64,000 bases of DNA, taken from positions 1 to 64,000 of IMG/VR virus record IMGVR_UViG_3300032294_002797. The stretch is one strand, 5' to 3'. The number at the start of each line of letters is the position of its first letter. Within the stretch, counting starts at the first letter, position 1. Below the pieces are notes generated by a model, which searched no databases, was not told the DNA's origin, and was given only the letters and a program-made list of their open reading frames with translations. Shown one piece after another: positions 13,997 through 32,835 of the stretch. Position numbers and translations under genes: made by a program.

Positions 13997-14044
13997 CTCG
14001 CTGACTACAACCACAAAAACCAAATCCGGCGGATTAGCTAAGAC
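13997..14044. repeat. dispersed repeat family B copy 1
   Basis: GCTGACTA-N14-AAATCCGNNGGATTA-N5-GAC. Confidence 0.8.
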
Positions 14045-14224
14045 TAATCGCCGGACCTGATTATCTCTAAAGATTGATAAAAATCGTTTATAGATTTTTA
14101 CTACCTATATGTGGATTCCAAAAATAACTATACCAAACTCCTAACCCAATCAATGTTAGCAGAGTAAATGTTAATCCACCAATCCAATACCAATTAACTA
14201 AAGGAATGTCTATCATAAGTCACC

Positions 14225-14467
14225 TCATATAGTAATGTATTCAGTATCTTTTATTTTAGATTTACTAATTTTGGGTCTGTGACCAACCTTAGTAATCTTG
14301 CCTCTATGATCCTTATGTTCCAAAGACATAAAGCAACGCTCCCCGCGATCATCGTAGTCTTTGAAGTGAAAGTCATAATTTTTTAAAACATCCTCTGGTG
14401 ATGTGTCGGAGTCATAAATCTCTCCCTCTACATCGAAAGCCAGAGTTCTATGGAAGGTTCTAGGCAT
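14225..14467 (-). CDS. hypothetical protein
   Basis: GAGGAG RBS. Confidence 0.7.
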   Translation of the reverse strand: MPRTFHRTLAFDVEGEIYDSDTSPEDVLKNYDFHFKDYDDRGERCFMSLEHKDHRGKITKVGHRPKISKSKIKDTEYITI

Positions 14468-14756
14468 GATGATACTCCTCTTCTGAAGATGGACTATCTT
14501 GATAGAATTTAGACTCTTTGTTTTTAGTTAAAGTAGCGGGTTGATTAAAATCTTCCCAATTTTCTACTAAAACTTCAGGAGCTTCTTTTCTTATCTCAGA
14601 TTCCAAAGCATAATCAGATGACTTATCTTTTTCTTTAGATAGATAGTCTCTTAACCGATCCTTAATCTGCATGAAATCTAGCTCACCCAGAATTTGATCT
14701 ATATACTTTCTCTGAATCTCTTTCCTATTAACCTCTCTGATATATCGGCTCTTCAT
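14460..14756 (-). CDS. hypothetical protein
   Basis: GAGGTG RBS; weak resemblance to 15690..15887. Confidence 0.7.
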   Translation of the reverse strand: MKSRYIREVNRKEIQRKYIDQILGELDFMQIKDRLRDYLSKEKDKSSDYALESEIRKEAPEVLVENWEDFNQPATLTKNKESKFYQDSPSSEEEYHHA

Positions 14757-14921
14757 AAATCACCTCATGGTTTCAAAGTTAAAAAACACTTTAGCCCATG
14801 ATTCCATCGTCCCTCACAGTATGGTCTGTGATTGATTATCAGCCCCGTGGACAAGTGTCATTATACCACACGAGGTTATGGACGCAAATTTTTAAAAGAG
14901 AGAGTTTTTCGGTCAGACTAT

Positions 14922-15107
14922 CTATTTAGAATCGTTTACAATCACTTTTGGAATGACATCATTAAGATCAAAAATATTTTCGTTGGTTATCAACTCTGTT
15001 TTAGAAAACCAAGCTTGTGGCTTATGAAAGTTTGGGTTGTTGTCAACGAAGTATCTTTGTCCTAACAAAAGATAAAAGCATAAAACTGGATCAAGAGGTA
15101 TAAGCAT
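14922..15107 (-). CDS. hypothetical protein
   Basis: Small ORF. Confidence 0.45.
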   Translation of the reverse strand: MLIPLDPVLCFYLLLGQRYFVDNNPNFHKPQAWFSKTELITNENIFDLNDVIPKVIVNDSK

Positions 15108-15350
15108 TGTTATTTAAAAAAATAGTGTCTTGACCATACAAATGATAACCTTATATATTATGCAGAGGGGGTGATAATTACTAGTAGAGGCGGTTACTTA
15201 ATACTTATATAACTACTATACTCTAGAGATCACCAAGCCGTCAATCATACCGCAAATAATACAACCTATAAAAATAGCATACAGCATCTGTAAAATTTCC
15301 TCAAGGTGTTGACAAGACCAATGTTGTTCGTATAATACTGCGTAGGCCGA

Positions 15351-15536
15351 TTATCCTGTTGTTACATTCATATTTGCTCCTGAGTTGTCAAGTGATTGAT
15401 ACAAACCATCAATATAATCCCGGTCAGACTCAGACAGGGACTTATCATTCCAATGAGCATATGAAAGGGCATCAAGAATAATCTCCATATCTTTGGTGCT
15501 AAATTTATATGAACCGTATTCTTCGTCGTATTTCAT
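15351..15536 (-). CDS. hypothetical protein
   Basis: GAGG RBS; DMEIILDAL motif shared with 6376..6576. Confidence 0.65.
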   Translation of the reverse strand: MKYDEEYGSYKFSTKDMEIILDALSYAHWNDKSLSESDRDYIDGLYQSLDNSGANMNVTTG

Positions 15537-15660
15537 AAACTAACCTCTCTTGTAAACAAGATAAATAGAACTAATGAAGCAACCGTAAACTAAACAGATC
15601 AGAGTAAAATATATCACTTGCACTCCTCCATACTACCAGTATACCAGACCTATCGGTCGC

Positions 15661-15689
15661 CGCAACCCCTTGACTATAAAGAACTTACA
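15661..15689. repeat. family A single 29-bp site (degenerate)
   Basis: CGCAACCCCTT-N7-AAGAACTTACA; abuts the stop codon at 15690. Confidence 0.6.
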
Positions 15690-15887
15690 TCATTCGGCCA
15701 GAATATCAGGATAAAATTCTTTGATCTCATTCTCCAAAGGCTCATTATCCATCAAGTCTTTACTTTCCACTAACTTTTCATAAGCCCAACTATAAAGAGT
15801 ATCCAAATCCATACCATCTAAGATACTAGAAGCATAAACTCTAATAATATCATCACGATTTTTATCAGTAACAGTAATTATTCCCAT
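15690..15887 (-). CDS. hypothetical protein
   Basis: GGAGA RBS. Confidence 0.7.
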   Translation of the reverse strand: MGIITVTDKNRDDIIRVYASSILDGMDLDTLYSWAYEKLVESKDLMDNEPLENEIKEFYPDILAE

Positions 15888-16170
15888 TCTTTAATCTCCA
15901 CAATATTTTCAGGACCAAAATCCCCAAAGAACTCAGGGTCGGTATATAGTTTATTATTCAGATAATTAGCGATCCTATCCTTATCATAGTCAAGATCATC
16001 GTCTACAATAAGTTCCATACTAATCTTAATTACTTTCATCAGGAACATCTCCAATTACTTCATCAATATACCAATCATAACCCTTATCATCCATCACCCG
16101 TAATTCCTCACTAAGAATCTCAATAGCATTAGTAGCCTCTTGACTATCAGGGTCTTTAATAGAGGGCTCG

Positions 16171-16353
16171 TCAAATATTACAACAATCTTCATGCTTTTT
16201 TCCCTTATTAATTTCAGTCATATAAATATTAGCAACCCTCAAATACATCTCACAATCAGTAAGATACTTCTCATTACCAGTATCCATATACCACTTGAGT
16301 CTTTGACTAGAACAATCTAAGGTATAATTAAGTGATCGAATAATATCCTCCAT
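16171..16353 (-). CDS. hypothetical protein
   Basis: Purine-rich RBS. Confidence 0.55.
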   Translation of the reverse strand: MEDIIRSLNYTLDCSSQRLKWYMDTGNEKYLTDCEMYLRVANIYMTEINKGKKHEDCCNI

Positions 16354-16502
16354 CCTCTTCCTTTCTGCACAATTAAGGTCCGTACAATAACAAAAACTGA
16401 ACCCATAGATATACTATCAGATAGTACAGAAAATTAGGAGGGGGTTCTAATATTTTCATAATACATGCTCCTTAGAACATATATTATAATATACCCCTAA
16501 AA

Positions 16503-16550
16503 CTCGCTGACTATCACTAAGACCGCCAAATCTGTAGGATTAGGTGAGAC
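16503..16550. repeat. dispersed repeat family B copy 2
   Basis: GCTGACTA-N14-AAATCTGTAGGATTA-N5-GAC. Confidence 0.8.
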
Positions 16551-16649
16551 TATAAAAATATCTTATATTGAGAACTAATCTCAACTAATTATTTACTATA
16601 TCTTTTACAACCTTGTTACTATTACAGTATACCACACTCTAAAGGTTGT

Positions 16650-16678
16650 CGCAAGTGGTTGACTCATAAGAACTTAGA
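16650..16678. repeat. family A single 29-bp site
   Basis: CGCAAGTGGTT-N7-AAGAACTTAGA. Confidence 0.6.
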
Positions 16679-16708
16679 ATCAGTAGTTCTTGTTACTATA
16701 TCAATATT

Positions 16709-16755
16709 CTCGCTGACTATCGCCAAGACCGCAAATCCGCTGGATTAGGCGAGAC
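16709..16755. repeat. dispersed repeat family B copy 3
   Basis: GCTGACTA-N13-AAATCCGCTGGATTA-N5-GAC. Confidence 0.8.
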
Positions 16756-16799
16756 AAATTAAAAGATTCTACTCTTTATATTTATAGTTAAGATTTTAA

Positions 16800-16828
16800 C
16801 CTAACCCTTTGTCCCATAAAGACTTACA
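16800..16828. repeat. family A single 29-bp site
   Basis: CCTAACCCTTT-N7-AAAGACTTACA. Confidence 0.65.
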
Positions 16829-16884
16829 TCCACACACCTATCCATTATATCGGCACTGTGGCGTTTTGTCTATAACTTTTTTGA

Positions 16885-16966
16885 CGTAACCCGTTGTGGC
16901 ACTTAAACTTACGACAAAATTTCGGGGCCCGATTTGCCCTAAGTCCTTTGATACCAAGCACTTACG
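16885..16966. repeat. 82-bp double-palindrome element (family A) copy 1
   Basis: 29+24+29 bp architecture. Confidence 0.9.
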
Positions 16967-16984
16967 TCAAATGATGTTGAATCA

Positions 16985-17031
16985 AAAGAGAAAGCCGCAG
17001 CCGGTTTCCCAGCCACGGCTCTCCCCCTTTT
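16985..17031 (-). terminator. intrinsic terminator
   Basis: Long GC-rich hairpin with GAAA-type loop and T-rich tail after the DUF932 gene. Confidence 0.7.
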
Positions 17032-17049
17032 CATCGTGACACGAAAAGA

Positions 17050-17997
17050 TCAGACGGCGTTCGCAAACTCCACTGCGGTATTGAGTGCCTTGAGATTATC
17101 AACTCCGTTCTGGCCGAACCAGAGAGAGTCAAGGCGATTGCTCACATTGCGACCCTTAGTATAATTCAGGTATTCATTGTAGCCGTTATAAGCAGCCCAC
17201 CATGTACCCCGAACCCCCGTTGCACTCTGCTTCGGGCCTTCAACAAGGGCGAGAATCTCGTCCATGATATTGCGGGTACGGGTTTTGATATCCTCGTCGG
17301 GAGTCTTATCAATACCCAGCACCACCTTCACATAACGCTTGATATCTGCTTGATTGAAGTCCTTACTGGCGAGGAACCGATACTGTTCCGCAGTAGCCTC
17401 AAACTGAGCATTGATATTGTCCATAATATCACGCACGTTTTCCAGATTGGTCTTGCTGGAACGAGTGTGACGAATACGAATCAACTGGCTATCCTTACTG
17501 GAGTGAGCAGCCGCAAGCGTATTCACGCACACGACGCGAATCGGAGTATATCCGACGCGAATCGACGTGGTGCCGTCATGGCTGTTCGACAGCAGAATGA
17601 ACTTGCTCACCTCGTCACCGGGAACAATCTCGCTGTTCGAGCGGTTGAGTTGAGCCAGAACCCAAACCTTTTCACCTTCGGAGAGAGAGCCAGCCGTATG
17701 CAACTGGCACTCACCAGCGTCGAGAAACGGCTGGAACCAATCGAAAGCGGCTTGATTCTGGAGCGGCGTATAACGCGGCCCCACAACACCCAGCACGCGA
17801 TTATCATCCTTACGATAGGTAGCCTTGGCATTGACCAATGTACCCTCTGCGGTAAACAAATCCTTTGTGCCAACTTCCCAATCCAGACCAGCAGCGGTAA
17901 TCGCTTCGCCGATAGAGGGATTTTCGTCCAACTGCGTACCCTCACCATGCCAAGGGGTAGCACCAACAAACATCATCTTTTCAACCATAGCAGGCAT
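17050..17997 (-). CDS. DUF932 family phage/plasmid-like protein
   Basis: PWHGEG, AGLDWEV, LGVVGPRYTPLQN, LLSNSHDGT, TPIRVVCVNT and GTWWAAYN motifs. Confidence 0.9.
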   Translation of the reverse strand: MPAMVEKMMFVGATPWHGEGTQLDENPSIGEAITAAGLDWEVGTKDLFTAEGTLVNAKATYRKDDNRVLGVVGPRYTPLQNQAAFDWFQPFLDAGECQLHTAGSLSEGEKVWVLAQLNRSNSEIVPGDEVSKFILLSNSHDGTTSIRVGYTPIRVVCVNTLAAAHSSKDSQLIRIRHTRSSKTNLENVRDIMDNINAQFEATAEQYRFLASKDFNQADIKRYVKVVLGIDKTPDEDIKTRTRNIMDEILALVEGPKQSATGVRGTWWAAYNGYNEYLNYTKGRNVSNRLDSLWFGQNGVDNLKALNTAVEFANAV

Positions 17998-18039
17998 AAT
18001 CAACCCTTTCGTGTTATCGTTCTTCGTTCAACTGTACTG

Positions 18040-18068
18040 ATTCTACACTATAGATATCGGCCTGTCAA
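18040..18068 (-). promoter_or_regulatory. sigma70-type early promoter with CCGATA box
   Basis: TTGACA-ggCCGATAtctatagtg-TAGAAT. Confidence 0.8.
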
Positions 18069-18096
18069 GCAGAAAACTTGCGAAAAAATTTCGTGA

Positions 18097-18178
18097 CGCA
18101 AACCCTTGTCGCACAAGCACTTACGTCAAAATCGGCCCGCCCGATTTGCCCTAAGTCTTTGCTGGGGCAGGATTTAGG
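18097..18178. repeat. 82-bp element copy 2
   Basis: 29+24+29; contains the stop codon of 18151..18657. Confidence 0.9.
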
Positions 18179-18657
18179 AGAGGCACCCGGAAATCCTTCT
18201 CAAACATTTTAACCGTGTCTGAGCGATAAGCACATTCGTCTGGCATATAGCAATAAACACCTACACACTGTGCTTTGGGACAATCTTCATGGATAGTATT
18301 TTTAATATGCCTAATGGTTGAGCCAGAGCAAACTAGATCATCAACAATAATGTATCTGAATGGAGTTACTCCCTCCATAGGAAAATCGCTGTAGCATTTC
18401 TCATCTGGCTTACGAATAAGAACAATATGTTTTTTCAGTAATTCAGCAATTTGTGGAACAACAACAAGTCCACTCACACCACAACAAGCAATACTATCAA
18501 ACTCGTTAGCAATCTTTCTTAGATCACAAACAGCCTTGATAATAACTTTGTTTCTGGCCTGATGATTTAATACCCTGCAAGTGTGGCTAGCACCTTGAAT
18601 AATCTTACCATCTTCGGTGCGTCTAAAGTCTTCAACCATATTATTCATCACATTCAT
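18151..18657 (-). CDS. phosphoribosyltransferase-like protein
   Basis: PRPP-binding motif YIIVDDLVCSGST; IACCGVSG; LIRK. Confidence 0.8.
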   Translation of the reverse strand: MNVMNNMVEDFRRTEDGKIIQGASHTCRVLNHQARNKVIIKAVCDLRKIANEFDSIACCGVSGLVVVPQIAELLKKHIVLIRKPDEKCYSDFPMEGVTPFRYIIVDDLVCSGSTIRHIKNTIHEDCPKAQCVGVYCYMPDECAYRSDTVKMFEKDFRVPLLNPAPAKT

Positions 18658-18748
18658 AAAAACGGACGGTACGATTTGAACGTACTAGAAAGAAAGGAAA
18701 GAAAGAATAGATACTTGTCCCACCAAGTTGCGTCCGTTCAGAAAAGAT

Positions 18749-18943
18749 TCAATCGTCAATTAGTTCGTCTGTGATATTATGATAATAGTTTTCCCAGCCA
18801 GCATTATCCATAGTCTCAGTCTCGTCTTCATCAAGACCAGCCCAAGGCTCATCAGTGCCATCATTATAGTAGCACTCGTCTTCATACAATTCTTCAGAAT
18901 TGTCTAGAATATTATGATAGTCATATTCAAAATCTCTACTCAT
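18749..18943 (-). CDS. acidic hypothetical protein
   Basis: AGGAG RBS; very Asp/Glu-rich. Confidence 0.6.
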   Translation of the reverse strand: MSRDFEYDYHNILDNSEELYEDECYYNDGTDEPWAGLDEDETETMDNAGWENYYHNITDELIDD

Positions 18944-18993
18944 CTCTTTTCTCCTTTGAAAACTATCATACACCAATCAGCCGGTTTGTCAAG

Positions 18994-19066
18994 TGGGGCC
19001 TGTGGGACTCGAACCCACGACCAAAGGTTTAAAAGACCCTTGCTCTACCAACTGAGCTAAAGCCCC
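18994..19066 (-). tRNA. trnK: tRNA-Lys(TTT)
   Basis: Full cloverleaf, anticodon loop CT-TTT-AA, TTCGA T-loop; own promoter. Confidence 0.95.
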
Positions 19067-19106
19067 TACTTTGTATAGTTTATCCTATCGCTTCCATATT
19101 GTCAAG

Positions 19107-19178
19107 TGACCCCAATGAGAATCGAACTCATATTAACAGATTGAAAGTCTGCTTTCCTAACCATTAGAAGATGGGGCC
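19107..19178 (-). tRNA. trnE: tRNA-Glu(TTC)
   Basis: Cloverleaf, loop CT-TTC-AA. Confidence 0.9.
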
Positions 19179-19309
19179 ACTCCCGCAACTCAACGTCAGC
19201 CTCCGTTTTGCTATTGTACATAATCGGTATTCTGTTGTCAAGACTTGAGTTGTTTTTGAATCGAAATGGTGTATAATGACTTAGTGAGTTGTACTACAGG
19301 AGTTCCATT

Positions 19310-19798
19310 ATGAAATGTATTAATTGTAATAAAGATACAGATAACCCTAAATTTTGCTCTAGATCATGCGGAGTGTCTTATAACAACAGAGTAAAACCAA
19401 AAAGAATTAAAAGAATGCAAACATGTATATTTTGTAAAAATCAATTTCATTCTTTACATAGTTATAATCAAAAATATTGTAATAAAAAATGTTTACAAAA
19501 TCATAGAGAGCACAATATCCAAACCAATGGTTTTGGAGAAGGTCATTATCATAATAATTCTATTAGAAAATACCTAATTAAAAAACATGGTAATCATTGT
19601 ATGATCTGTAACCAGTCTGGAGATAATTGGAACGGTAAGCCAATTACTTTAATTGTGGATCATATTGATGGTAAATCTAATAACAATAAACTAGATAACC
19701 TTAGAATTGTTTGTCCTAATTGCGATAGTCAACTACCTACATACAAAGCAAAAAACAAAGGAAATAGCACTCGTAGTTATTTTATAGTCCAAAAGTAA
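19310..19798 (+). CDS. HNH endonuclease inserted in tRNA cluster
   Basis: FCSRSC and YCNKKC Zn motifs; VDHIDGKSNNNKLDNLRIVCPNC; GGTGTA upstream; AGGAG RBS. Confidence 0.9.
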   Translation: MKCINCNKDTDNPKFCSRSCGVSYNNRVKPKRIKRMQTCIFCKNQFHSLHSYNQKYCNKKCLQNHREHNIQTNGFGEGHYHNNSIRKYLIKKHGNHCMICNQSGDNWNGKPITLIVDHIDGKSNNNKLDNLRIVCPNCDSQLPTYKAKNKGNSTRSYFIVQK

Positions 19799-19799
19799 A

Positions 19800-19874
19800 T
19801 AGGGCGTGGAGGAGTCGAACCTTCCCTTTTTTTCACCTTATAAGAGTGACTGCCACTACCGGCGGCAACGCCCC
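19800..19874 (-). tRNA. trnI: atypical tRNA-Ile(TAT)
   Basis: Acceptor GGGGCGT/ACGCCCT, anticodon arm TCACT-CTTATAA-GGTGA, TTCGA; short D-loop and T-stem mismatch. Confidence 0.65.
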
Positions 19875-19924
19875 ATATGAGTATCATACACTATCTATCG
19901 TCAGTTGTCAACCCCAATCTTTAG

Positions 19925-20009
19925 CGGAATCTGAGGGATTCGAACCCCCGGAGGATTTCTCCTCGTCGGTTTAGTAAACCGGTGCATTAGACCACTCTGC
20001 CAAGATTCC
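19925..20009 (-). tRNA. trnS: tRNA-Ser(ACT)
   Basis: Type II cloverleaf with long variable arm, G73, loop TT-ACT-AA. Confidence 0.85.
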
Positions 20010-20012
20010 AAA

Positions 20013-20084
20013 CTGGCGAGACAGGATTCGAACCTGTAACCTAGCGGTTAACAGCCGCTTGCACTACCGTTGTGCTACCCGCCA
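20013..20084 (-). tRNA. trnN: tRNA-Asn(GTT)
   Basis: Cloverleaf, AGCGG-CTGTTAA-CCGCT. Confidence 0.92.
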
Positions 20085-20089
20085 TCAAT

Positions 20090-20161
20090 TTCCGGAGCAT
20101 GGGTACGATCCATGAATAAACGGACCAAAGCCGTTTGTGATACCAGTTTCACCACTCCGGA
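20090..20161 (-). tRNA. trnQ: tRNA-Gln(TTG)
   Basis: Cloverleaf, AACGG-CTTTGGT-CCGTT; atypical T-loop ATCGTAC. Confidence 0.8.
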
Positions 20162-20164
20162 GCA

Positions 20165-20235
20165 AGCCCACAACTAGAATCGAACTAGTATTAGATGATT
20201 ACAAATCAACTGTATTACCATTATACTATGCGGGC
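20165..20235 (-). tRNA. trnT: tRNA-Thr(TGT)
   Basis: Cloverleaf, loop TT-TGT-AA. Confidence 0.85.
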
Positions 20236-20240
20236 GAAGC

Positions 20241-20429
20241 CTACATATCATAGTCCTGACGCCAACCCCTGTCAATATCACGACGGGTACGCTGACGCTT
20301 GGGACGGTTATCAAACAACGTATTACGTTCTTCTCGGTGTCCAGTAGCCAACTCCCACGGTTGCTTGACCTTGACCTTGATCTTATTGTGGTTGCGTTGG
20401 GGTCGAGTATCGTCGTTGAGGTGGTGCAT
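20241..20429 (-). CDS. basic hypothetical protein
   Basis: Arg-rich small ORF; start uncertain. Confidence 0.55.
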   Translation of the reverse strand: MHHLNDDTRPQRNHNKIKVKVKQPWELATGHREERNTLFDNRPKRQRTRRDIDRGWRQDYDM

Positions 20430-20637
20430 AGTCAAACCATTGTCCATTATCGTGTAAATAAAAAACCTTGTCAATATTAGGATCGTACGCCATTAAACAG
20501 TATTGTACCGGATAAACTGGTTTTGTCAACTGTTTTTGTGGAAGTTTAGGAAGTTTAATATCGCCCTTTTGATAGTCTTTTACACCAGTATAGGCTAAAC
20601 CTAATAGTGCAACGATTACCCCAATCCATTGGATCAT
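20383..20637 (-). CDS. membrane-anchored hypothetical protein
   Basis: AGGAGA RBS, N-terminal TM segment; follows promoter 20660-20688. Confidence 0.7.
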   Translation of the reverse strand: MIQWIGVIVALLGLAYTGVKDYQKGDIKLPKLPQKQLTKPVYPVQYCLMAYDPNIDKVFYLHDNGQWFDYAPPQRRYSTPTQPQ

Positions 20638-20659
20638 CAATTCTCCTTTGCGTCTAACT

Positions 20660-20688
20660 AGCATACCATACTTATCGGCAATTGTCAA
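20660..20688 (-). promoter_or_regulatory. sigma70-type early promoter with CCGATA box
   Basis: TTGACA-attgCCGATAagtatgg-TATGCT. Confidence 0.8.
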
Positions 20689-20705
20689 GCGACTCTTTAG
20701 TTTTT

Positions 20706-20787
20706 CCTAAGTACTTGAGACATAAGCACTTACGTCAAATTTTCGCCGCCCCGTTCGTCCTAAGTGGTTACCCACAAAGGACTTAGG
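20706..20787. repeat. 82-bp element copy 3
   Basis: 29+24+29. Confidence 0.9.
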
Positions 20788-20794
20788 AAGAGTT

Positions 20795-21031
20795 TTATTC
20801 TTCTTCCAGGCTCCAACCGGCTTTTCTTACCACCTTAGTAGTTTTATATACTTTAGTATCTGGTAATGCAGTAGCGTAGTCTTTGAATCCTCTTTCATCA
20901 AGATAAAAATGTTCGTCGAGCGTGTCAAATTTATTAGTCTCCCATAATGCTGCTACAGCAGCGTCCAGAGGTTTTTGATTAGTAGAGTAAATAAGTTGTA
21001 GTGTGCCAGATTGTATATAATACTTAGCCAC
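20795..21031 (-). CDS. hypothetical protein
   Basis: GTG start with GGAGG RBS, overlapping the upstream stop. Confidence 0.65.
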   Translation of the reverse strand: MAKYYIQSGTLQLIYSTNQKPLDAAVAALWETNKFDTLDEHFYLDERGFKDYATALPDTKVYKTTKVVRKAGWSLEEE

Positions 21032-21623
21032 TATACCCTCCACCACATTTGTAGCATGAGCAATATTCATATTCGTCCCCGCCCGTTCCTTCGGCCCAAC
21101 AAGGTTCCTCATACTCACCAATATCACCAAGGCTTTCACGACCAACATCTACAATAACCAATACTTTATGCTTACCTCTTTTTACATATCCAAGATTAGC
21201 ATTATGAGCATCTGTATAGGTTATCCCAAACATTTCTTCAATATCAACTATCATTCTGTTGATAACTTCGAAATTTTCGCACAGGTCATTCTCATAACAG
21301 TAGCCATCGCATTGCCTACACTTGAGCGGTGAAGCAATTTCGGTCAAGTATCCCCACTCGCTCAGTACCAATTTTTCCTCGGCTTTATAACCACCCTTGC
21401 CGTCTGATACTGCAAAATAGTTAGGAATCCGTATTCTGCAAACTGGACTATAAACACGCGGAGTAAAAGTACACGGTTCAGATAGTTCGCTCTGTATATG
21501 ATGAGCAAACTCGGCTAAACTTTTATTAGGAAAACTTTTGAATCCGTATCGGCTACCTTTCATTTTATAGAAAGAGTTTTTGCTTCCCCCATCGGCATAT
21601 TTACCAATATATTTAGTAGTCAT
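21024..21623 (-). CDS. protein kinase-like fold protein
   Basis: Gly loop DGGSK, beta3 Lys (GFKSF), catalytic DAHNAN, DFG-like DVG. Confidence 0.65.
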   Translation of the reverse strand: MTTKYIGKYADGGSKNSFYKMKGSRYGFKSFPNKSLAEFAHHIQSELSEPCTFTPRVYSPVCRIRIPNYFAVSDGKGGYKAEEKLVLSEWGYLTEIASPLKCRQCDGYCYENDLCENFEVINRMIVDIEEMFGITYTDAHNANLGYVKRGKHKVLVIVDVGRESLGDIGEYEEPCWAEGTGGDEYEYCSCYKCGGGYSG

Positions 21624-21632
21624 TACATTCTC

Positions 21633-22343
21633 CTAATGAGAGGGAAACAAAACATTAGCCAGACCACGAACACAAAGATCACAGTGTACGCTATTTTTGC
21701 TTTTTGTACAAGTCACAACGCCACGACCACGACGGATTTCCGGGCAAGTGATAAACTTCTCACCCTCTAATACAACGAGTTTAGGCAACGCTTCTCTCCA
21801 TGCGGCGGCTTTAGCCTTGCCGCGAGGACGCTTGGGAGCGATTTTAGTATCACTATCGCACCATGCGAAAAGTTTGAAACCAGCCGCTTTCGCTTGTTTC
21901 ATATCTTCACCGTCGTGGATACTAGCATACATATTTATATACTTGCCAAGTTGAGTAGACAATTTAGTATCATAAATATGGGTATAAGCCCACATAGTCG
22001 GCAGACTACCGCCACTGGCAAGAATACTCTCACAAGCCCACAATACATTATCTACATACTCATGGTCGAGTTCGCCATACTTGAAAAAGTCTCCACGCTC
22101 ATGCCAGCGAACATCTTTATTTTTCTTGACAGCATCCACAAGCATGGCACGGATACGATTTTTTTCCGTGATAAGATTTTGCATACCGGCAGGACGCACA
22201 CCGGGATAGATATTTTCCAAGTCCTCGGCATAGCATCCGTTCCCGAGAAAATCACAATCGCTAGGGCAAGTATCGCCAACGGGGCGACTCACTACGATGC
22301 AATTTTCTTTGCCCAACTTGTCATTACCATTTGCTGTTTTCAT
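21633..22343 (-). CDS. Gp88-like Cys-rich (putative Fe-S) phage protein
   Basis: TCPSDC...GCYA, VRWHERGDF, WAYTH and C-terminal CP...C...CxxC. Confidence 0.7.
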   Translation of the reverse strand: MKTANGNDKLGKENCIVVSRPVGDTCPSDCDFLGNGCYAEDLENIYPGVRPAGMQNLITEKNRIRAMLVDAVKKNKDVRWHERGDFFKYGELDHEYVDNVLWACESILASGGSLPTMWAYTHIYDTKLSTQLGKYINMYASIHDGEDMKQAKAAGFKLFAWCDSDTKIAPKRPRGKAKAAAWREALPKLVVLEGEKFITCPEIRRGRGVVTCTKSKNSVHCDLCVRGLANVLFPSH

Positions 22344-22364
22344 ATTCTTTCTCCTGTGCTACTG

Positions 22365-22393
22365 ATTCTACATTAGAGTATCGGCAGTGTCAA
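22365..22393 (-). promoter_or_regulatory. sigma70-type early promoter with CCGATA box
   Basis: TTGACA-ctgCCGATActctaatg-TAGAAT. Confidence 0.8.
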
Positions 22394-22421
22394 GAGAAAA
22401 ACTTTGGCAAAAATATTTTGA

Positions 22422-22503
22422 TGCAAGTCCTTGCTGCATCAGCAGTTACGTCAAAATCGGCCCCGCGAATTCGCCCTAAGTCTTTATGCTGCAACAACTT
22501 AGC
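22422..22503. repeat. 82-bp element copy 4
   Basis: 29+24+29; abuts the tRNA-Asp 3' end. Confidence 0.9.
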
Positions 22504-22576
22504 GAGAGCGACGGGACTTGAACCCGCAACCTCCAGCGTGACAGGCTGGCGATCTAACCAATTGATCTACGCTCCC
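22503..22576 (-). tRNA. trnD: tRNA-Asp(GTC)
   Basis: Cloverleaf, CCAGC-CTGTCAC-GCTGG. Confidence 0.95.
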
Positions 22577-22579
22577 AAA

Positions 22580-22651
22580 TAGCCCCAAGAGGAATCGAAC
22601 CTCTAACCAGTGCTTAGAAGGCACTTGTTATATCCATTTAACTATAGGGCC
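22580..22651 (-). tRNA. trnR: tRNA-Arg(TCT)
   Basis: Cloverleaf, AGTGC-CTTCTAA-GCACT. Confidence 0.92.
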
Positions 22652-22717
22652 ATAATACCGATAGCCGCCAGTTATTCACCAGCGGCATCTCGGTTTATTA
22701 TAGCATATCGTAGATGC

Positions 22718-24098: not shown

Positions 24099-24145
24099 AT
24101 CGACATTCTACCTTAAAAACTTTAATTGTCAAGTACACCTTAGTC

Positions 24146-24192
24146 TGGCTGACTATCAGCAACGGCAGCAAATCCGTAGGATTAGGCAAGAC
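24146..24192. repeat. dispersed repeat family B copy 4
   Basis: GCTGACTA-N14-AAATCCGTAGGATTA-N5-GAC. Confidence 0.85.
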
Positions 24193-24279
24193 AAGCAGAT
24201 TGGGTTATGCCATACTCGGCCTTACATTTAACCGTGGCTTCTTTGATATCATTCTGCCAGCGGCCCTCATCTACTTATC
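24190..24279 (-). ncRNA. candidate small RNA (~90 nt)
   Basis: Own promoter 24287-24315; 11-bp closing helix with two G-U pairs on minus strand; no ORF. Confidence 0.5.
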
Positions 24280-24333
24280 GTGTTCTAGTATACCTCTATT
24301 ATCGGATATTGTCAAGGTTAGTCTTTAAAAAAT

Positions 24334-27071: not shown

Positions 27072-27135
27072 ACAGACCTCTCTTTCTGCACCAATCATAT
27101 CATAATACAGACTATTTGTCAAGAGCCCATTATTT

Positions 27136-27182
27136 TGGCTGACTATCGCCCATAACCGCAAATCCGTAGGATTAGGAGGGAC
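27136..27182. repeat. dispersed repeat family B copy 5
   Basis: Consensus match; contains the stop of 27172..27333. Confidence 0.85.
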
Positions 27183-27333
27183 AGGATATACGTTCAACTA
27201 AAATATAGTCGCCATATTTTTCTTTGGCTTTTCGTAGAGCATCATATTCGCTCATAGCAACAACGTATCCAACAAAACGATTGTGTTGGAAAACTCGCCA
27301 TGAAATACCGGAATAGCAAAATGTAGTGTTCAT
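27172..27333 (-). CDS. hypothetical protein
   Basis: Probably leaderless, under promoter 27340-27367; ends CPS-stop inside repeat B. Confidence 0.6.
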   Translation of the reverse strand: MNTTFCYSGISWRVFQHNRFVGYVVAMSEYDALRKAKEKYGDYILVERISCPS

Positions 27334-27468: not shown

Positions 27469-27496
27469 GGAAGGGTTCAACTTTTTAGATTATGAA

Positions 27497-27904: not shown

Positions 27905-28003
27905 ATGAACCCTTTTTGTTGTGAAAACTTTCCCTTATGTCTCACGATTCTACACTACTTATCGGCAAGAGTCAAGTGCTAAGTTTAGAAAAAATATTTT
28001 CGC

Positions 28004-28085
28004 CATAAGTCGTTGCAGCATAAGGAGTTGCGTCAAATTTTGCGGCACCCGCTCGTCCTAAGTGCTTACACACCAAGGGCTTACG
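28004..28085. repeat. 82-bp element copy 9
   Basis: 29+24+29; contains the stop at 28081. Confidence 0.9.
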
Positions 28086-28287
28086 TCAGTACGACAGGCT
28101 CGCTCCTGAACGAACATACAGGCTGGCCGCTTGCCGCAACCAAAACGTCAAGCATTGCACCAACCTGTTCCATACGTTCAACAGGCTGATCCATATCGTA
28201 CTCGGGAATCTCAAGAACAAATTCACGATCCAAACCCACATCACCATTATCGGTTTCGATCACAATATCAAAAAAACGGTGTTGCAT
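28081..28287 (-). CDS. hypothetical protein
   Basis: Single-gene cassette with promoter 28311-28339 and GAGG RBS. Confidence 0.7.
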   Translation of the reverse strand: MQHRFFDIVIETDNGDVGLDREFVLEIPEYDMDQPVERMEQVGAMLDVLVAASGQPVCSFRSEPVVLT

Positions 28288-28366
28288 CTAATCCTCTCTT
28301 TCGTATGCTAATCCTACACTATACTTATCGGCTTGTCAAGCGGGTCTCTTGAAAAATTTTATTTGA

Positions 28367-28448
28367 CGTAAAGCGTTGAGACATAAGGAGTTACGTTAAA
28401 TTTTGCGGCGCCCCCTCGCTCTAAGTTCTTTGGCGGTAAGGGTTTGCG
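28367..28448. repeat. 82-bp element copy 10
   Basis: 29+24+29; contains the stop at 28421. Confidence 0.9.
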
Positions 28449-28972
28449 ACAGGAGGATAAAACTTCATAAAATTCTCAATATGATCGTCATATGCCATAT
28501 TCATATTGTCACAAGTTTCATCAAAACCAATAGAATATCCTTCCTTACCTCTCTTACGGCTATATTCCTGAACATACCTAGTAACATACTTGCTTTCTGT
28601 CCATTTGAAAATCGTACCTTTTGGAGTAATAAAAACCATGAACAAAATATCAAAAAGTTCAGGTTTGATTTTTTGCAAAGTATAATACTTATATTTGTTT
28701 TGATGCAAAGTCAATTTAGCGGTTTTTACTTCGCACCTAATACTATCATTCAAAAGAATATCAAAAATTTTACCGTGACCGTGCCGTTTCACATCATACT
28801 TAGCCCTACTCAAACGATCACACATCAGGCACTCACCAGCATCCCCCATTCCGGTAGAATCCAGATTGGAGATTTTCCAGCATAGATAATTTTTCTTACG
28901 CGAATAAAAATTGTCTGGACGGGAAATTTTGAGATTATGCTTGATCCTGTTGAAATCTCTCATCGTAAACAT
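28421..28972 (-). CDS. PD-(D/E)xK restriction-endonuclease-like protein
   Basis: GDAGE...FDILLN...CEVKTA catalytic pattern; AGGAGG RBS. Confidence 0.7.
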   Translation of the reverse strand: MFTMRDFNRIKHNLKISRPDNFYSRKKNYLCWKISNLDSTGMGDAGECLMCDRLSRAKYDVKRHGHGKIFDILLNDSIRCEVKTAKLTLHQNKYKYYTLQKIKPELFDILFMVFITPKGTIFKWTESKYVTRYVQEYSRKRGKEGYSIGFDETCDNMNMAYDDHIENFMKFYPPVANPYRQRT

Positions 28973-29058
28973 TGCTTTTCCTCCTTATTGGAATACGCTT
29001 AGTCTACAATGCTTATCGGCTAATGTCAATAGATTTAGCCATAAAATTATTTTTTGAT

Positions 29059-29140
29059 CATAAGTCTATATCCCATAACAACTTACGTCAAATTTTCGCC
29101 GCCCCGCTCGCCCTAAGTGCTTACGCACCAAGGGTTTGCG
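29059..29140. repeat. 82-bp element copy 11
   Basis: 29+24+29. Confidence 0.9.
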
Positions 29141-29147
29141 GCGAGTT

Positions 29148-29381
29148 TTATTCAAAGTCTACGAAAATAACTTGATTATATCCACGAGGCTTAATAGTAA
29201 GGCTCTCGCTGTAATCGTAGGTATCGGCCTTTACACCCGTCATACCCGCGAGCAACTTGGCCTTTCGCACAATATTACGCTGAGACGCCCCGCTATTAAT
29301 AGCAAACTCATAACGGTTAGCCCAAGAGTAGTTTGCCTCACCATTAAATGTGTCGGTCTGCGTAACGGTAACCTTCATCAT
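29148..29381 (-). CDS. hypothetical phage protein
   Basis: TDTFNGEANYSW; start moved to MMKVTV. Confidence 0.7.
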   Translation of the reverse strand: MMKVTVTQTDTFNGEANYSWANRYEFAINSGASQRNIVRKAKLLAGMTGVKADTYDYSESLTIKPRGYNQVIFVDFE

Positions 29382-29495
29382 CTTATTATTCCTTTTAGAG
29401 AGAAAAGTGTCGATCCAATTTTTAACGTTTTTAGTAAGCATTTTAACAATTCTGTGTATAATATAGTATACATCAACTATCAGGAGATGAATACT

Positions 29496-29897
29496 ATGTC
29501 AAAATATGATCCTCAAGAATACCAAAGAAACAAACAGGCCTATTTAGAAAGACAGAAACGATACAAGAACAAACACAAGGATACCATCAATGAGCGTCAA
29601 CGTCAATACCGTGAGTCAAATAAATCCCAACTCAATGTTTATGCCAATAGGCGTAAAAATAAAATTAGAGAAAAATATGATGAATATATGCAAGATAAAA
29701 AATGTAGCCATTGTGGATACTCTGATCCTAGATCGTTAGTTTGGCATCATACTGATTCGTCTAACAAAAAGAATGGCGTTGTTCAATTAGTTGGCAAGAA
29801 ACATGGATGGGATACTATTTTAGCAGAAATTAATAAGTGTATATGTTTATGCCATAATTGCCACAATATATTGCATAATCACCAATCATCTCCGTAG
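29496..29897 (+). CDS. HNH endonuclease
   Basis: CSHCG...LVWHH...EINKCICLCHNCH; AGGAG RBS; TGTGTA late-type motif upstream; start moved from 29136. Confidence 0.85.
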   Translation: MSKYDPQEYQRNKQAYLERQKRYKNKHKDTINERQRQYRESNKSQLNVYANRRKNKIREKYDEYMQDKKCSHCGYSDPRSLVWHHTDSSNKKNGVVQLVGKKHGWDTILAEINKCICLCHNCHNILHNHQSSP

Positions 29898-30154
29898 TCG
29901 GAATCGTGGTTATAGTATTCGTCCACACCCCATCCACATGAGCCGAACGCAGATTCAGCATCACCATCCATACTATCATCGTACGAATCATCCCAACCGT
30001 TCTCCAAATCTTCGGCGGTAACATCACCGTAAAAATCTTTATGGTCATCATACAGGTACTCGGCCAAAAGGGCGTCACTAGGATCATGCTCAACAACCAT
30101 ATCATCATCCTCATAAGCGTTATCGGGATCGAACAGTGGATCAGGGTGGCTCAT
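29879..30154 (-). CDS. highly acidic protein
   Basis: Strongly Asp/Glu-rich; AGGAGA RBS. Confidence 0.7.
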   Translation of the reverse strand: MSHPDPLFDPDNAYEDDDMVVEHDPSDALLAEYLYDDHKDFYGDVTAEDLENGWDDSYDDSMDGDAESAFGSCGWGVDEYYNHDSDYGDDW

Positions 30155-30177
30155 TTGTTTTCTCCTTTTCACCAATC

Positions 30178-30360
30178 CTACCAAATAAAATCGTTCGCGT
30201 CAAGAGGCTCGGGATACATTTCTTCCCACAAGCCAGTAACTTCTGCGTAATCAAACGGACTGCAATCGCTAGAGTCAATCGGCTCGGCCAGGGGCTCCAA
30301 GATACCATCTTCGGTCATCTCGTTCAGAATCCGGTTGATTTCATCAAAATCGTTCAGCAT
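30178..30360 (-). CDS. acidic hypothetical protein
   Basis: GGGAGA RBS; promoter 30387-30414. Confidence 0.7.
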   Translation of the reverse strand: MLNDFDEINRILNEMTEDGILEPLAEPIDSSDCSPFDYAEVTGLWEEMYPEPLDANDFIW

Positions 30361-30451
30361 AATTGATTCTCCCTTGTGATACGCTGATTCTATACTAATT
30401 ATCGGTCATGTCAAGCCCGCTCTATAGAAAATCTCTAAAAAAATTTCTTGA

Positions 30452-30533
30452 TGTAAGTCTATGGCAGATAAGGAGTTACGTCGCGGCGGGCGGCGCCGCC
30501 TTGTCCTAAGTACTTTAGGCTCAAGGCTTTACG
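30452..30533. repeat. 82-bp element copy 12
   Basis: 29+24+29; abuts the stop at 30534. Confidence 0.9.
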
Positions 30534-30845
30534 TCAATTTCCCACAACCATACCGTCTATAAACGGATAGGATTTATCGTTGATTTTCACAAACCATTCG
30601 AAATTCTTTTGATAAACATAACGTGGGCTATACTGGTTAATTCGATCTTTAGTAGTCAGAGTTTGCCAGCCACCACTATTCAGTGTATAGGTATCATCCT
30701 CATGAATCTTCACCACATAGGTGCTGTGTAGTCTAATTCCTACGCTACCATCATGCAGAATTTCAGCGTAAGTATTATTACCAACCTTGCGAGTATCCCG
30801 ATTAGTCTTACCACGAACCATACTAACTGCTTCGGAATGATTCAT
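30534..30845 (-). CDS. hypothetical phage protein
   Basis: LNSGGWQTLTTKDRIN motif typical of small phage early proteins. Confidence 0.75.
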   Translation of the reverse strand: MNHSEAVSMVRGKTNRDTRKVGNNTYAEILHDGSVGIRLHSTYVVKIHEDDTYTLNSGGWQTLTTKDRINQYSPRYVYQKNFEWFVKINDKSYPFIDGMVVGN

Positions 30846-30994
30846 TACTTGTTTTCCTTTTTCTTGGACTCGACCATCTCACGATACAGATTTTCCAGAA
30901 ACCTAACTTGTGCAACTGCACGGCCAGTTTCTTGCTTCATGCGAGTTTCTGTTTTCTGGTACTCGCTAACCGGCTTTCTCTTGGTTTTCATCAT
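30845..30994 (-). CDS. basic hypothetical protein
   Basis: AGGAGA RBS; promoter 31011-31039. Confidence 0.6.
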   Translation of the reverse strand: MMKTKRKPVSEYQKTETRMKQETGRAVAQVRFLENLYREMVESKKKENK

Positions 30995-31069
30995 CTTTCT
31001 CCTGCGATTGATTCTACAGTATAGATCGGCAAGAGTCAAGCATAATCTTTAGCAGATTTTTATTTTGTT

Positions 31070-31151
31070 CTTAAGTCGTTGGAATATAAGGAGTTACGTC
31101 GAATTTTGCGGCGCAAATTTTCCCTAAGTGCTTATGCAGTAAGGGTTTGCG
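31070..31151. repeat. 82-bp element copy 13
   Basis: 29+24+29; contains the stop of 31132..31293. Confidence 0.9.
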
Positions 31152-31293
31152 TCTCTTTTATCCATCGCCTTTTCAACTGTTTTGCAAGATGTTGTATTCG
31201 GTTCATAATAGCGGCCCGCTGTAACGGATGTTGTACAGTGGACAAACGTATCTGTTCGATTCGCAGAATATCTTGAAGCACTCGCGTTTTCAT
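31132..31293 (-). CDS. hypothetical protein (53 aa, below ORF-track cutoff)
   Basis: MKTRVLQDILRIEQIRL... starts 3 nt after the upstream stop. Confidence 0.55.
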   Translation of the reverse strand: MKTRVLQDILRIEQIRLSTVQHPLQRAAIMNRIQHLAKQLKRRWIKETQTLTA

Positions 31294-31295
31294 TT

Positions 31296-31664
31296 TTATT
31301 CCTTCCAAGCAAACGGAGAAATTTCCTCACCACAAGCCAGAATCGCAGCGTACTGGTGAGCAAGAGCCTCAACCCTTTCACGAGAACCCGGCTTGCCAGC
31401 CTTCACGATCATACTATCCTCACCACCCACAAATCGCGGGTCGTTGGTTTCCTTTTTAATCTTGCCCAGATTCTTGAGAGCCTTACGATTAAACTTGAGC
31501 ACCTTTTCGCTCACAACATACCTACCATGATCCTGCACACCGGACACATAGTCCACACCTTCCACAACCCGAGAGTCAGGAACCGGAACCAGAGTAGGAA
31601 TCGCAATTCCCTTGAAAACCATTCGTGCTTGACGCTTCGCATTTTCGATAATTTCAAACTTCAT
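31296..31664 (-). CDS. hypothetical protein, paralog of 34771..35085
   Basis: Shared NAKRQARMVFxGIAIPT...GKPGSxERVxALAxQYAAI...CGEExSPF. Confidence 0.85.
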   Translation of the reverse strand: MKFEIIENAKRQARMVFKGIAIPTLVPVPDSRVVEGVDYVSGVQDHGRYVVSEKVLKFNRKALKNLGKIKKETNDPRFVGGEDSMIVKAGKPGSRERVEALAHQYAAILACGEEISPFAWKE

Positions 31665-31703
31665 TTTCTTTCTCCTTTGGATTGGTTGGATTCTAGCAAA
31701 ATT

Positions 31704-31940
31704 TCAAGAGGCTGTCAACTCCATTTCCTCGATCATTTCCGCAAACGGAATCATCTTGGAAACGAGCGTCTGCTCAGTATTGTCATCATGGAAGAACGTT
31801 TGTACACTGTCGTTTTCCAGAAACACCGTAACTTGGAATCCGCAGATACTAGCGAAACCGCCGGTCGTGCGACGAATCCACATATCCTTCTCACCAAGAA
31901 ACCTAGCAGCAACCTTTTCAACCATCTCTTGCGTAATCAT
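31704..31940 (-). CDS. hypothetical protein
   Basis: Polypurine leader; promoter near 31966-31994. Confidence 0.7.
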   Translation of the reverse strand: MITQEMVEKVAARFLGEKDMWIRRTTGGFASICGFQVTVFLENDSVQTFFHDDNTEQTLVSKMIPFAEMIEEMELTAS

Positions 31941-32013
31941 CTCTTTCTCTCTTTCTTATACGGGAATTATACCTTAGTTATCGGCAAAAGTCAAGCAGAA
32001 TATTTAGAGAATT

Positions 32014-32042
32014 TTTAAATCCTTATTTCTCAACACTTTACG
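32014..32042. repeat. family A single 29-bp site
   Basis: TTTAAATCCTT-N7-AACACTTTACG. Confidence 0.65.
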
Positions 32043-32086
32043 TCAAGACCGGCCTGAATGGACACTTAGAATCTTGAGAAACTGAT

Positions 32087-32168
32087 CGTAAACCCTTGGC
32101 AGATAAGGAGTTACGTCAAATTTTGCGGCGCCGCCTCGCCGTAAGTGCTTATACAGCAAGGCTTTGCG
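32087..32168. repeat. 82-bp element copy 14
   Basis: 29+24+29. Confidence 0.9.
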
Positions 32169-32543
32169 TCAACTATTTACAACCCAGGCCGCTATACATC
32201 CGATCACGAATGAACAAAACAGCATAATCTGATCATTCTTTATCATTTTTTCTATGATCCTTTGAAGGGTAAACCAAATCAGAAACAAGCCAACTGCACC
32301 CAATACCCACCACAAATCCCACAAACATCCAAATCCATTCTACATTTAGATCGGCCATCCCTAGCACCCCTCTTTAGTTTTTATTCTACAGGAATTTTAC
32401 TGATCATGTACCCTAAGAAAAACCCTAGAGTCACAATAAAATTTAGACCCATCAAATATACAAGAATATTCATAAACCTTCACCTCTCTTTTCCACATTC
32501 TATACTATTATCGGCCTGCGTCAAGCCCAAGGTACAGTCTTTT

Positions 32544-32590
32544 TGGCTGACTAAACCCACTCAGCCCAAATCCGCAGGATTACCTGGGAC
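32544..32590. repeat. dispersed repeat family B copy 6
   Basis: Consensus match; contains the stop of 32580..32750. Confidence 0.85.
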
Positions 32591-32750
32591 ACTTATCCAT
32601 CACAGTATCCAGATATATCCCATCTTTACTCACAACCCATCCATATTCTACATCTTGCCCATAGACCCCAATATAACACCGACCTTTATCACACCCTTCG
32701 ATCTTGCACTCATAACCCACCAGACCCATCAACATAACCCAAATTGCCAT
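32580..32750 (-). CDS. hypothetical protein (56 aa)
   Basis: MAIWVMLMGLVGYECK...DKCPR-stop; AAGGA upstream. Confidence 0.5.
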   Translation of the reverse strand: MAIWVMLMGLVGYECKIEGCDKGRCYIGVYGQDVEYGWVVSKDGIYLDTVMDKCPR

Positions 32751-32788
32751 AGTTATCCAGAATCCTTTCTTTGACCAGACTATGTTTT

Positions 32789-32835
32789 TCGCTGACTATA
32801 CCCAACCTACCCAAATCCGTAGGATTACGTGGGAC
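32789..32835. repeat. dispersed repeat family B copy 7
   Basis: Consensus match; contains the stop of 32825..33031. Confidence 0.85.

What the first reader, a model, noticed from the sequence alone, without database searches (positions are those of the whole stretch)
13997..32835. Second dispersed element (family B): conserved boxes flanking a fixed-length variable 14-mer
Seen: 7 copies (13997, 16503, 16709, 24146, 27136, 32544, 32789) of GCTGACTA-N14-AAATCCGNNGGATTA-N5-GAC, one with N13, all in the same orientation, with an AATCC-N3-GGATT palindrome. Like family A, copies lie at unit ends, several of them about 15-30 bp upstream of the next -35 box. The N14 is different in every copy and C/A-rich. 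Inference: a bipartite site for a second DNA-binding factor, or an RNA processing or guide-like unit (small hairpin plus variable 14 nt).
Basis: partly seen in the sequence, partly recalled or inferred. Interest (0 to 1): 0.68.

Follow-up and report, generated by a model that had tools for sequence, protein, structure and literature searches.

The report
Phage early-gene junction element B
A conserved 52-base non-coding signal sits between small early genes of uncultured lake jumbo phages; it has a tiny hairpin and two short matching words whose job is unknown, and gene cassettes are swapped at it.

Summary
The motif occurs exactly 7 times in the 223-kb phage genome, with 0 expected by chance. 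An eighth, decayed copy lies at 12594-12646. All copies lie at 12.6-32.8 kb.

The genes there are on the minus strand, so the element should be read as its reverse complement. In that sense it has five parts: a TTGTC block, a 5-bp hairpin with a 3-nt loop, 14 variable bases, a TAGTCAGC box and an A-run. It lies after the end of one small early gene and before the promoter or ribosome site of the next.

The element is widespread in uncultured freshwater phage contigs. It is absent from cultured phages and from Rfam.

The "variable 14-mer" is not free. It holds two pentamers (T-G-G/C-x-y) 9 nt apart that stay identical while x and y change. I found no partner for them in cis, none in the phage genome, and no coding reason.

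The hairpin shows some compensatory changes but is too weak to be a terminator.

Conserved arms with unlike flanks show that cassettes recombine at the element.

Best reading: a transcribed junction signal, a relative in kind of the PeSL cassettes of T4-like phages. The mechanism is not settled. The guide-RNA idea is not supported.

The parts
32785..32838 (-). Element B copy 1 (N14 class GGGT/GGGT)
   Evidence: nhmmer 56.0 bits; exact pattern
32831..32837 (-). Copy 1: 5' block TTGTCCC (sense positions -10..-4; G at -8 invariant in 129 copies)
   Evidence: position table
32814..32826 (-). Copy 1: mini-hairpin, arms AATCC / GGATT, loop T-N-C
   Evidence: Stem pair counts: 93.8% paired; 11 cells changed on both sides against 2.0 in shuffles.
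32809..32813 (-). Copy 1: repeat R1 (TGGGT, sense 14-18)
   Evidence: identity covariation with R2
32800..32804 (-). Copy 1: repeat R2 (TGGGT, sense 23-27), 9 nt after R1
32786..32798 (-). Copy 1: box TAGTCAGC followed by GAAAA
   Evidence: AGTCAG invariant in the 135-row alignment, full box >=90%; A-run conserved
32540..32591 (-). Element B copy 2 (GGGC/GGGT). The 56-aa ORF 32580-32750 ends in its TAA.
32497..32524 (-). Sigma-70-like promoter after copy 2 (TTGACG, 16 nt, TAGAAT)
27131..27184 (-). Element B copy 3
27094..27122 (-). Promoter after copy 3 (TTGACA, 17 nt, TATGAT)
24142..24195 (-). Element B copy 4 (GCTG/GCTG), preceded by a conserved 78-nt leader
24105..24132 (-). Promoter after copy 4 (TTGACA, 16 nt, TAGAAT)
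16705..16758 (-). Element B copy 5 (the 13-nt variant)
16502..16552 (-). Element B copy 6 (one stem pair broken: C.A)
13993..14047 (-). Element B copy 7 (GGTT/GGTT)
12594..12646 (-). Decayed eighth copy: hairpin lost, repeats GGAA/GGAA and box kept
   Evidence: nhmmer 27.1 bits; sequence

Best explanation
Element B is a non-coding junction module of the early, host-sigma-70-transcribed, hyperplastic region of a clade of uncultured freshwater jumbo phages. It is about 52 nt long and always points the same way as the genes. Read on the gene strand it consists of: TTGTCYC; 3 nt; a 5-bp hairpin with a U-N-C loop; UUU; two identical pentamers (U-G-S-x-y) 9 nt apart; UAGUCAGC; GAAAA. I think it is transcribed as the tail of the upstream unit or as the leader of the downstream gene. 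I think it works in that RNA, or in the transcribing complex, as a factor-recognised signal that lets transcription through: a pause, attenuation or processing point that sets off neighbouring cassettes. Its two conserved arms also serve as the patches of homology at which cassettes are exchanged, as proposed for PeSL elements. Shown: the anatomy, orientation, position, spread, hairpin co-variation, repeat identity and mosaic flanks. Inferred: that the active form is RNA, and what it does.
For: The element is real and specific. It is absent from cultured phages and occurs in only 5 freshwater MAG contigs. It is co-oriented with genes in 145 of 152 copies. Upstream ORFs often end just before it, and 29 use its TAA as their stop. 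Of 212 copies, 95 have a promoter 14-34 nt after the box, 55 have one further on, and 29 have no promoter but a ribosome site and start codon within 50 nt (example); the element must therefore be read through. Distances to the -35 peak at 17, 23 and 30 nt, so there is no helical phasing. The hairpin has compensatory changes at 3 of 5 pairs and alternative stems. G.U-type variants number 25 on the sense strand against 11 on the other. The loop positions U and C are conserved asymmetrically. For mosaic junctions, pairs of copies share both flanks 110 times and one flank only 425 times; N14 differs in about 60% of the one-sided pairs. Published PeSLs have the same place and the same proposed role in shuffling (PMC2839356, PMC4122927).
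Against: The hairpin is weak: folding z-scores are near 0 for 5 of 7 copies and RNAalifold finds no consensus structure. The stem sequence is so conserved that a double-stranded DNA site is not excluded. The repeat identity, the most striking feature, is not explained by this reading. The one-sided-homology fraction at B (0.79) is the highest measured, but control points 300-600 nt away give 0.33-0.72 because the whole region is mosaic. One large family (leader C plus B) inflates the pair counts.
Confidence: 0.4

Rival explanations
1. B is a double-stranded DNA operator. A host or phage regulator binds the palindrome, the repeats and the box, and controls the early promoter just downstream.
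For: 45% of copies have a -35 starting 14-34 nt after the box, with a mode at 23 nt. The arm sequences are highly conserved. Direct repeats are typical of tandem-binding regulators. The 3' half (repeats plus box) survives loss of the hairpin.
Against: 29% of copies have no promoter within 120 nt, and 14% sit directly before a ribosome site. Spacings of 17, 23 and 30 nt are not phased by a helical turn. The stem changes are compensatory and include G.U types. The loop is asymmetric. About eight repeat classes in one genome would need as many proteins.
Confidence: 0.2
2. B is a weak, factor-dependent intrinsic terminator or attenuator and nothing more.
For: It has a hairpin followed by UUU. It occupies the slot that family A (long hairpin plus T-run) fills at other junctions.
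Against: It has only five base pairs and three U. It is not picked up by the terminator scan. 25 conserved bases downstream of the hairpin remain unexplained. Some genes lack a promoter of their own behind it.
Confidence: 0.1
3. B is a guide or sponge unit: the N14 pairs in trans with a host or phage nucleic acid.
For: The variable segment is flanked by constant parts. The doubled pentamer could bind a partner twice.
Against: There is no match or complement in the phage genome at up to 2 mismatches. No complement is enriched in 150-nt flanks. R1/R2 mismatches are not biased to wobble-compatible changes: 39 transitions to 49 transversions, against a baseline of 21 to 32. The fit to tRNA 3' ends is no better than chance. 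Pentamers are too short for specificity.
Confidence: 0.07
4. B is the site or end of a mobile element, or of a dedicated site-specific recombination system (integron-attC-like or MITE-like).
For: It sits at cassette ends, has mosaic flanks, occurs as tandem pairs flanking a small ORF (32.5/32.8 kb and 16.5/16.7 kb), and has terminal TWGTC words 39 nt apart.
Against: The genome has no tyrosine recombinase, Y1 transposase, reverse transcriptase or GIY-YIG nuclease detectable by Pfam. There are no inverted core sites. Crossovers fall on both sides of N14, as expected for plain homology.
Confidence: 0.07
5. B is a polymerase re-alignment or pause device. The two identical pentamers lie one RNA-DNA hybrid length (9 nt) apart, behind a hairpin whose base is 10 nt before U23/G24.
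For: The geometry matches hairpin-stabilised pauses (my knowledge of the his-leader pause, not tested here). U23 and G24 are nearly invariant. Conservation ends about 18 nt downstream of that point, roughly the downstream DNA held by RNA polymerase.
Against: This is purely geometric. There is no G at -10 of the consensus pause. No precedent exists for a 9-nt re-alignment. No copy-number variants of the unit exist in DNA.
Confidence: 0.06

Closest known systems
PeSL (promoter-early stem-loop) cassettes of T4-like phages (PMC2839356, PMC4122927)
   Same: Short conserved intergenic modules in the early hyperplastic region. A stem-loop lies just upstream of an A/T-rich stretch and a sigma-70-like promoter. 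They sit next to ORFans and at insertion, deletion and replacement junctions.
   Different: The PeSL stem-loop is stable and was shown to terminate; B's has 5 bp and must be read through. B has extra conserved single-stranded boxes and a co-varying direct repeat. Only about 45% of copies have the promoter attached. In this genome family A, not B, is the close PeSL counterpart.
Lambdoid nut sites (boxA, boxB hairpin, GU-rich boxC)
   Same: A 5-bp hairpin with conserved single-stranded boxes, read in early transcripts, orientation-specific, in a region full of terminators. This rests on my knowledge and was not tested.
   Different: Different box order and sequences, a 3-nt rather than 5-nt loop, and 7-8 copies rather than 2. 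No N-like or Nus-recruiting protein was identified.
Hairpin-stabilised (class I) transcription pause signals such as the his leader pause
   Same: A multipartite signal of about 50 nt: a small hairpin, a 10-11-nt GU-rich spacer, a U-then-G at the pause point, and conserved downstream DNA. This rests on my knowledge.
   Different: No leader-peptide context, and it is repeated as a dispersed family. Pausing was not tested.
Integron attC sites
   Same: Mark the 3' end of promoter-less or small gene cassettes, all in one orientation. Structure is more conserved than sequence in part of the site.
   Different: attC is an imperfect inverted repeat with RYYYAAC/GTTRRRY cores and needs an integrase. 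B has neither.
CRISPR repeat or solitary repeat units (RNA anti-CRISPRs)
   Same: A small conserved hairpin next to a variable stretch.
   Different: The variable part is 13-14 nt with an internal repeat. There are no arrays, no Rfam CRISPR-DR match and no targets.

Membership tests
PeSL cassette | Intergenic, in the early hyperplastic region, next to small ORFans | tested here: met
   the flanking genes are small, diverse and mostly without known families.
PeSL cassette | Strong sigma-70-like promoter directly downstream of the stem-loop | tested here: inconclusive
   Present within 34 nt in 95 of 212 copies and in 3 of 7 window copies; absent within 120 nt in 62.
PeSL cassette | Stable stem-loop acting as a terminator | tested here: not met
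   5-bp stem; z-scores near 0; no consensus fold; not in the terminator scan; genes without a promoter of their own follow it.
PeSL cassette | Lies at insertion, deletion or replacement junctions between related phages | tested here: met
   One-sided homology fraction of 0.79; worked examples.
Intrinsic terminator | G+C-rich stem of at least 5-7 bp followed by a U-tract | tested here: not met
   2 G-C pairs and UUU only.
Structured RNA family in Rfam 15 | Match to any covariance model | tested here: not met
   No hit on any copy even at E up to 10.
CRISPR-like guide unit | Variable part free in sequence and matching a target | tested here: not met
   Internal direct repeat, recurring classes, no target in the phage genome. 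Host genome unknown.
nut-type antitermination site | Hairpin plus boxA-like word in early transcripts upstream of terminators | tested here: inconclusive
   The anatomy is compatible and terminator-like family A lies downstream of several copies. No sequence match to known boxA or boxB was tested against a model.
nut-type antitermination site | Cognate antiterminator protein and read-through of terminators | not testable with these tools
   Needs expression data or biochemistry.
Mobile element or site-specific recombination site | Dedicated recombinase, transposase or nuclease in the genome | tested here: not met
   Pfam RVT_1, Y1_Tnp, Phage_integrase and GIY-YIG are absent. Serine recombinases and HNH nucleases were not searched.
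Protein-coding sequence | Open frame with codon-like conservation | tested here: not met
   Stops in two frames; all three codon positions equally conserved; 13-nt variants; no frame preference upstream.

The most novel reading that the evidence does not exclude
The two pentamers that must stay identical, 9 nt (one RNA-DNA hybrid length) apart and just behind a mini-hairpin, define a new kind of cis-signal recognised by sameness rather than by complementarity. One possibility is a matched pair of sites for re-alignment of a polymerase or its transcript. Another is a site that must bind the same trans-acting nucleic acid twice. In both cases it is used by a whole clade of lake jumbo phages to tune read-through between early gene cassettes.
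Probability: 0.12. Interest if true: 0.8.

Novelty: new variant of a known kind. Interest (0 to 1): 0.55.

Why it matters
Dispersed regulatory cassettes are thought to make the early regions of large phages both expressible and easy to reshuffle. So far they have been described mainly as terminator-plus-promoter pairs in cultured T4-like phages. Element B shows a second, differently built module in the same slot, conserved across many uncultured lake phages. It can serve as a marker for this clade and its cassette boundaries. It also carries an unusual evolutionary signature: two short direct repeats that change together. Such identity co-variation is rarely looked for. If it reflects a mechanism, it would be a new type of nucleic-acid signal. 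If it reflects a mutational process, it is a caution for motif studies.

Tried and rejected
- **Helix between the 5' N5 and the end of N14.** It was suggested by four window copies. There is no covariation and no excess pairing over permuted controls.
- **Closing helix between the 5' block and the 3' tail.** None.
- **Partner of the pentamers in 150-nt flanks.** Not enriched.
- **Partner of the pentamers in the phage genome.** None.
- **Phage tRNA 3' ends (N72-N73-CCA) as partner.** 3 of 8 classes fit, which is what chance gives.
- **Coding.** Rejected for the upstream ORF tail, a mini-ORF, Trp codons and the antisense frame.
- **Slippage dynamics of a 9-nt unit.** There are no one-unit or three-unit variants in IMG/VR. 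The apparent N7/N8 variants are normal-length copies with decayed hairpins.
- **Promoter for the phage sigma factor or for a T7- or N4-type polymerase.** No copies lie outside the early region and no such polymerase was found. The 4690-aa ORF looks like a fibre or adhesin, not a polymerase.
- **Link to one gene family.** The downstream genes fall into 74 clusters and the upstream genes into 45.
- **Known RNA families.** None match.
- **Three loose IMG/VR scans.** They returned mostly chance matches and added only 23 true copies after profile filtering.

No other genetic code was used.
Full report
**Observation.**
When one arm position may be C or T, there are 7 matches in the whole 223,302-bp virus record, all on the + strand and all in the window. 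Shuffles expect none. A profile built from relatives finds the same seven, plus one decayed copy at 12594-12646, and nothing else in the genome.

**Strand.**
GC skew, nine tRNA genes, the ORFs and about 35 strong sigma-70-like promoters all lie on the minus strand between 12 and 36 kb. The element should therefore be read as its reverse complement. In that sense, counting from the T of TAATCC as position 0, the parts are:
- a TTGTCYC block at -10 to -4;
- the arms AATCC and GGATT around a T-N-C loop;
- T at position 14;
- 14 variable bases at 15-28;
- TAGTCAGC at 29-36;
- GAAAA at 37-41.

**Spread.**
Five complete relatives carry 1-3 exact copies each. Only five contigs of the species-genome collection hold the element. 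All five come from freshwater MAGs and are probably phage DNA. Cultured phages have neither the region nor the element. After profile filtering I had 233 distinct copies.

**Position.**
- The copies point the same way as the neighbouring genes in 145 of 152 cases.
- Upstream ORFs often end just before the element, and 29 end in its own TAA. There is no preferred frame, and the element is not coding.
- Downstream, 95 of 212 copies have a promoter whose -35 starts 14-34 nt after the box, and 55 have one further on.
- 29 copies have no promoter but a ribosome site and start codon within 50 nt, and 33 have neither.
- In relative G001 the copy orthologous to 24142-24195 runs straight into a ribosome site and an ATG.

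The element must therefore be read through, so it is not an efficient terminator. The distances to the -35 peak at 17, 23 and 30 nt, which is not a helical repeat.

**Hairpin.**
The stem is only 5 bp. Folding energies of 61-nt RNAs are no better than shuffles for 5 of 7 copies, and RNAalifold gives no consensus structure. Even so, the evidence favours a real mini-hairpin:
- Diverged copies keep the pairing with other bases: AACCC/GGGTT, AATCT/AGATT, AATGT/GCATT, and a re-registered 6-bp stem.
- On a 135-row alignment, 3 of 5 pairs change on both sides, in 11 cells against 2.0 in shuffles.
- G.U-type variants are commoner on the sense strand, 25 against 11.
- The loop keeps U and C asymmetrically.

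This favours a hairpin in one strand, most simply in RNA. It does not prove it.

**The N14.**
This was the surprise of the analysis.
- Positions 14-18 and 23-27 are the same pentamer, T-G-S-x-y.
- Positions 17 and 26 agree in 175 of 224 copies against 63.7 expected, using all four bases.
- Positions 18 and 27 agree in 141 of 217 against 65 expected.
- Positions 16 and 25 agree in 191 of 232 against 149 expected. The following four positions do not agree.
- Six pairs of otherwise identical N14s differ only at positions 17 and 26, and in the same way. Single changes at either position are rare.
- The identity survives loss of the hairpin.

The explanations I tested for the repeat identity all failed; they are itemised with call numbers under Tried and rejected, and the ruled-out readings of the whole element are there too. 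The cause remains unexplained.

**Neighbours and exchange.**
The flanking genes are many unrelated small ORFans. The same gene family is found behind different N14 classes.
- Among pairs of copies, both flanks are homologous 110 times and only one flank 425 times.
- That one-sided fraction of 0.79 is the highest measured. Control points 300-600 nt away give 0.33-0.72, because the whole region is mosaic.
- In one-sided pairs the N14 differs in about 60%. Crossovers therefore fall in the conserved arms on either side of it.
- Worked examples: G000 and G001 share the promoter, the leader and the left half of copy 4, then diverge. G000 has two copies about 150 nt apart where G001 has one.

**Comparison with PeSL cassettes.**
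The nearest published kind is the PeSL cassette of T4-like phages: a stem-loop, an A/T-rich stretch and an early promoter in hyperplastic regions, which mediate modular shuffling (PMC2839356, PMC4122927). B shares the place and the role in exchange. It fails the defining test of a stable terminating stem-loop, and it adds boxes and repeats of its own.

**Verdict.**
This is a real, conserved and apparently undescribed junction element. The most likely reading, at about 0.4, is a transcribed, factor-recognised read-through signal that doubles as a recombination linker. A DNA operator remains possible at about 0.2. The matched pentamers are the part worth an experiment.

**Limits.**
RNA runs could not be searched. 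The host is unknown.

Noticed in passing
window 24196-24273 (minus strand): A 78-nt non-coding 'leader' lies right after a promoter (-35 at 24315) and right before B copy 4. It recurs at 80-98% identity in more than 30 loci. In 24 of 29 distinct loci it is directly followed by B. The start codon of its 22-aa ORF is not conserved. Two short helices are predicted without compensatory changes, and there is no Rfam hit. It is a candidate small RNA or leader.
   Followed up: partly
AAGnACTTACGTCAA), preceded by a GC-rich stretch and followed by an A/T run, lying just upstream of most early promoters. It looks like the PeSL-type terminator-plus-promoter cassette of this phage.
   Followed up: partly
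minus-strand promoters between window 18000 and 32600: About 35 near-consensus sigma-70-like promoters share a conserved word, GCCGATA, inside the spacer (TTGACA-nn-GCCGATA-n8-TAGAAT). This is unusual for a spacer.
   Followed up: no
window 15309-15336 (+): A perfect consensus promoter (TTGACA, 16 nt, TATAAT) points against the early genes, so antisense transcription is possible.
   Followed up: no
window 18993-22652 (minus strand): A cluster of nine tRNA genes. Four have a U1-A72 first pair, and the anticodons include tat (Ile) and act (Ser). Several are followed at once by a promoter.
   Followed up: partly
window 36299-36955 (+): An ORF with sigma-70 region 2 sits at the switch from minus-strand early genes to plus-strand genes. 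It is the only sigma-like gene in the genome and has no match in cultured phages.
   Followed up: partly
window 47946-62018 (+): A 4690-residue ORF with a collagen-like G-X-Y run near the N terminus. It is probably a giant fibre or adhesin.
   Followed up: no
window 32540-32838 and 16502-16758: Two tandem pairs of element B. One pair flanks a 56-aa ORF and the other flanks about 150 nt. A relative has a single copy at the second place. These are candidate excisable mini-cassettes.
   Followed up: partly
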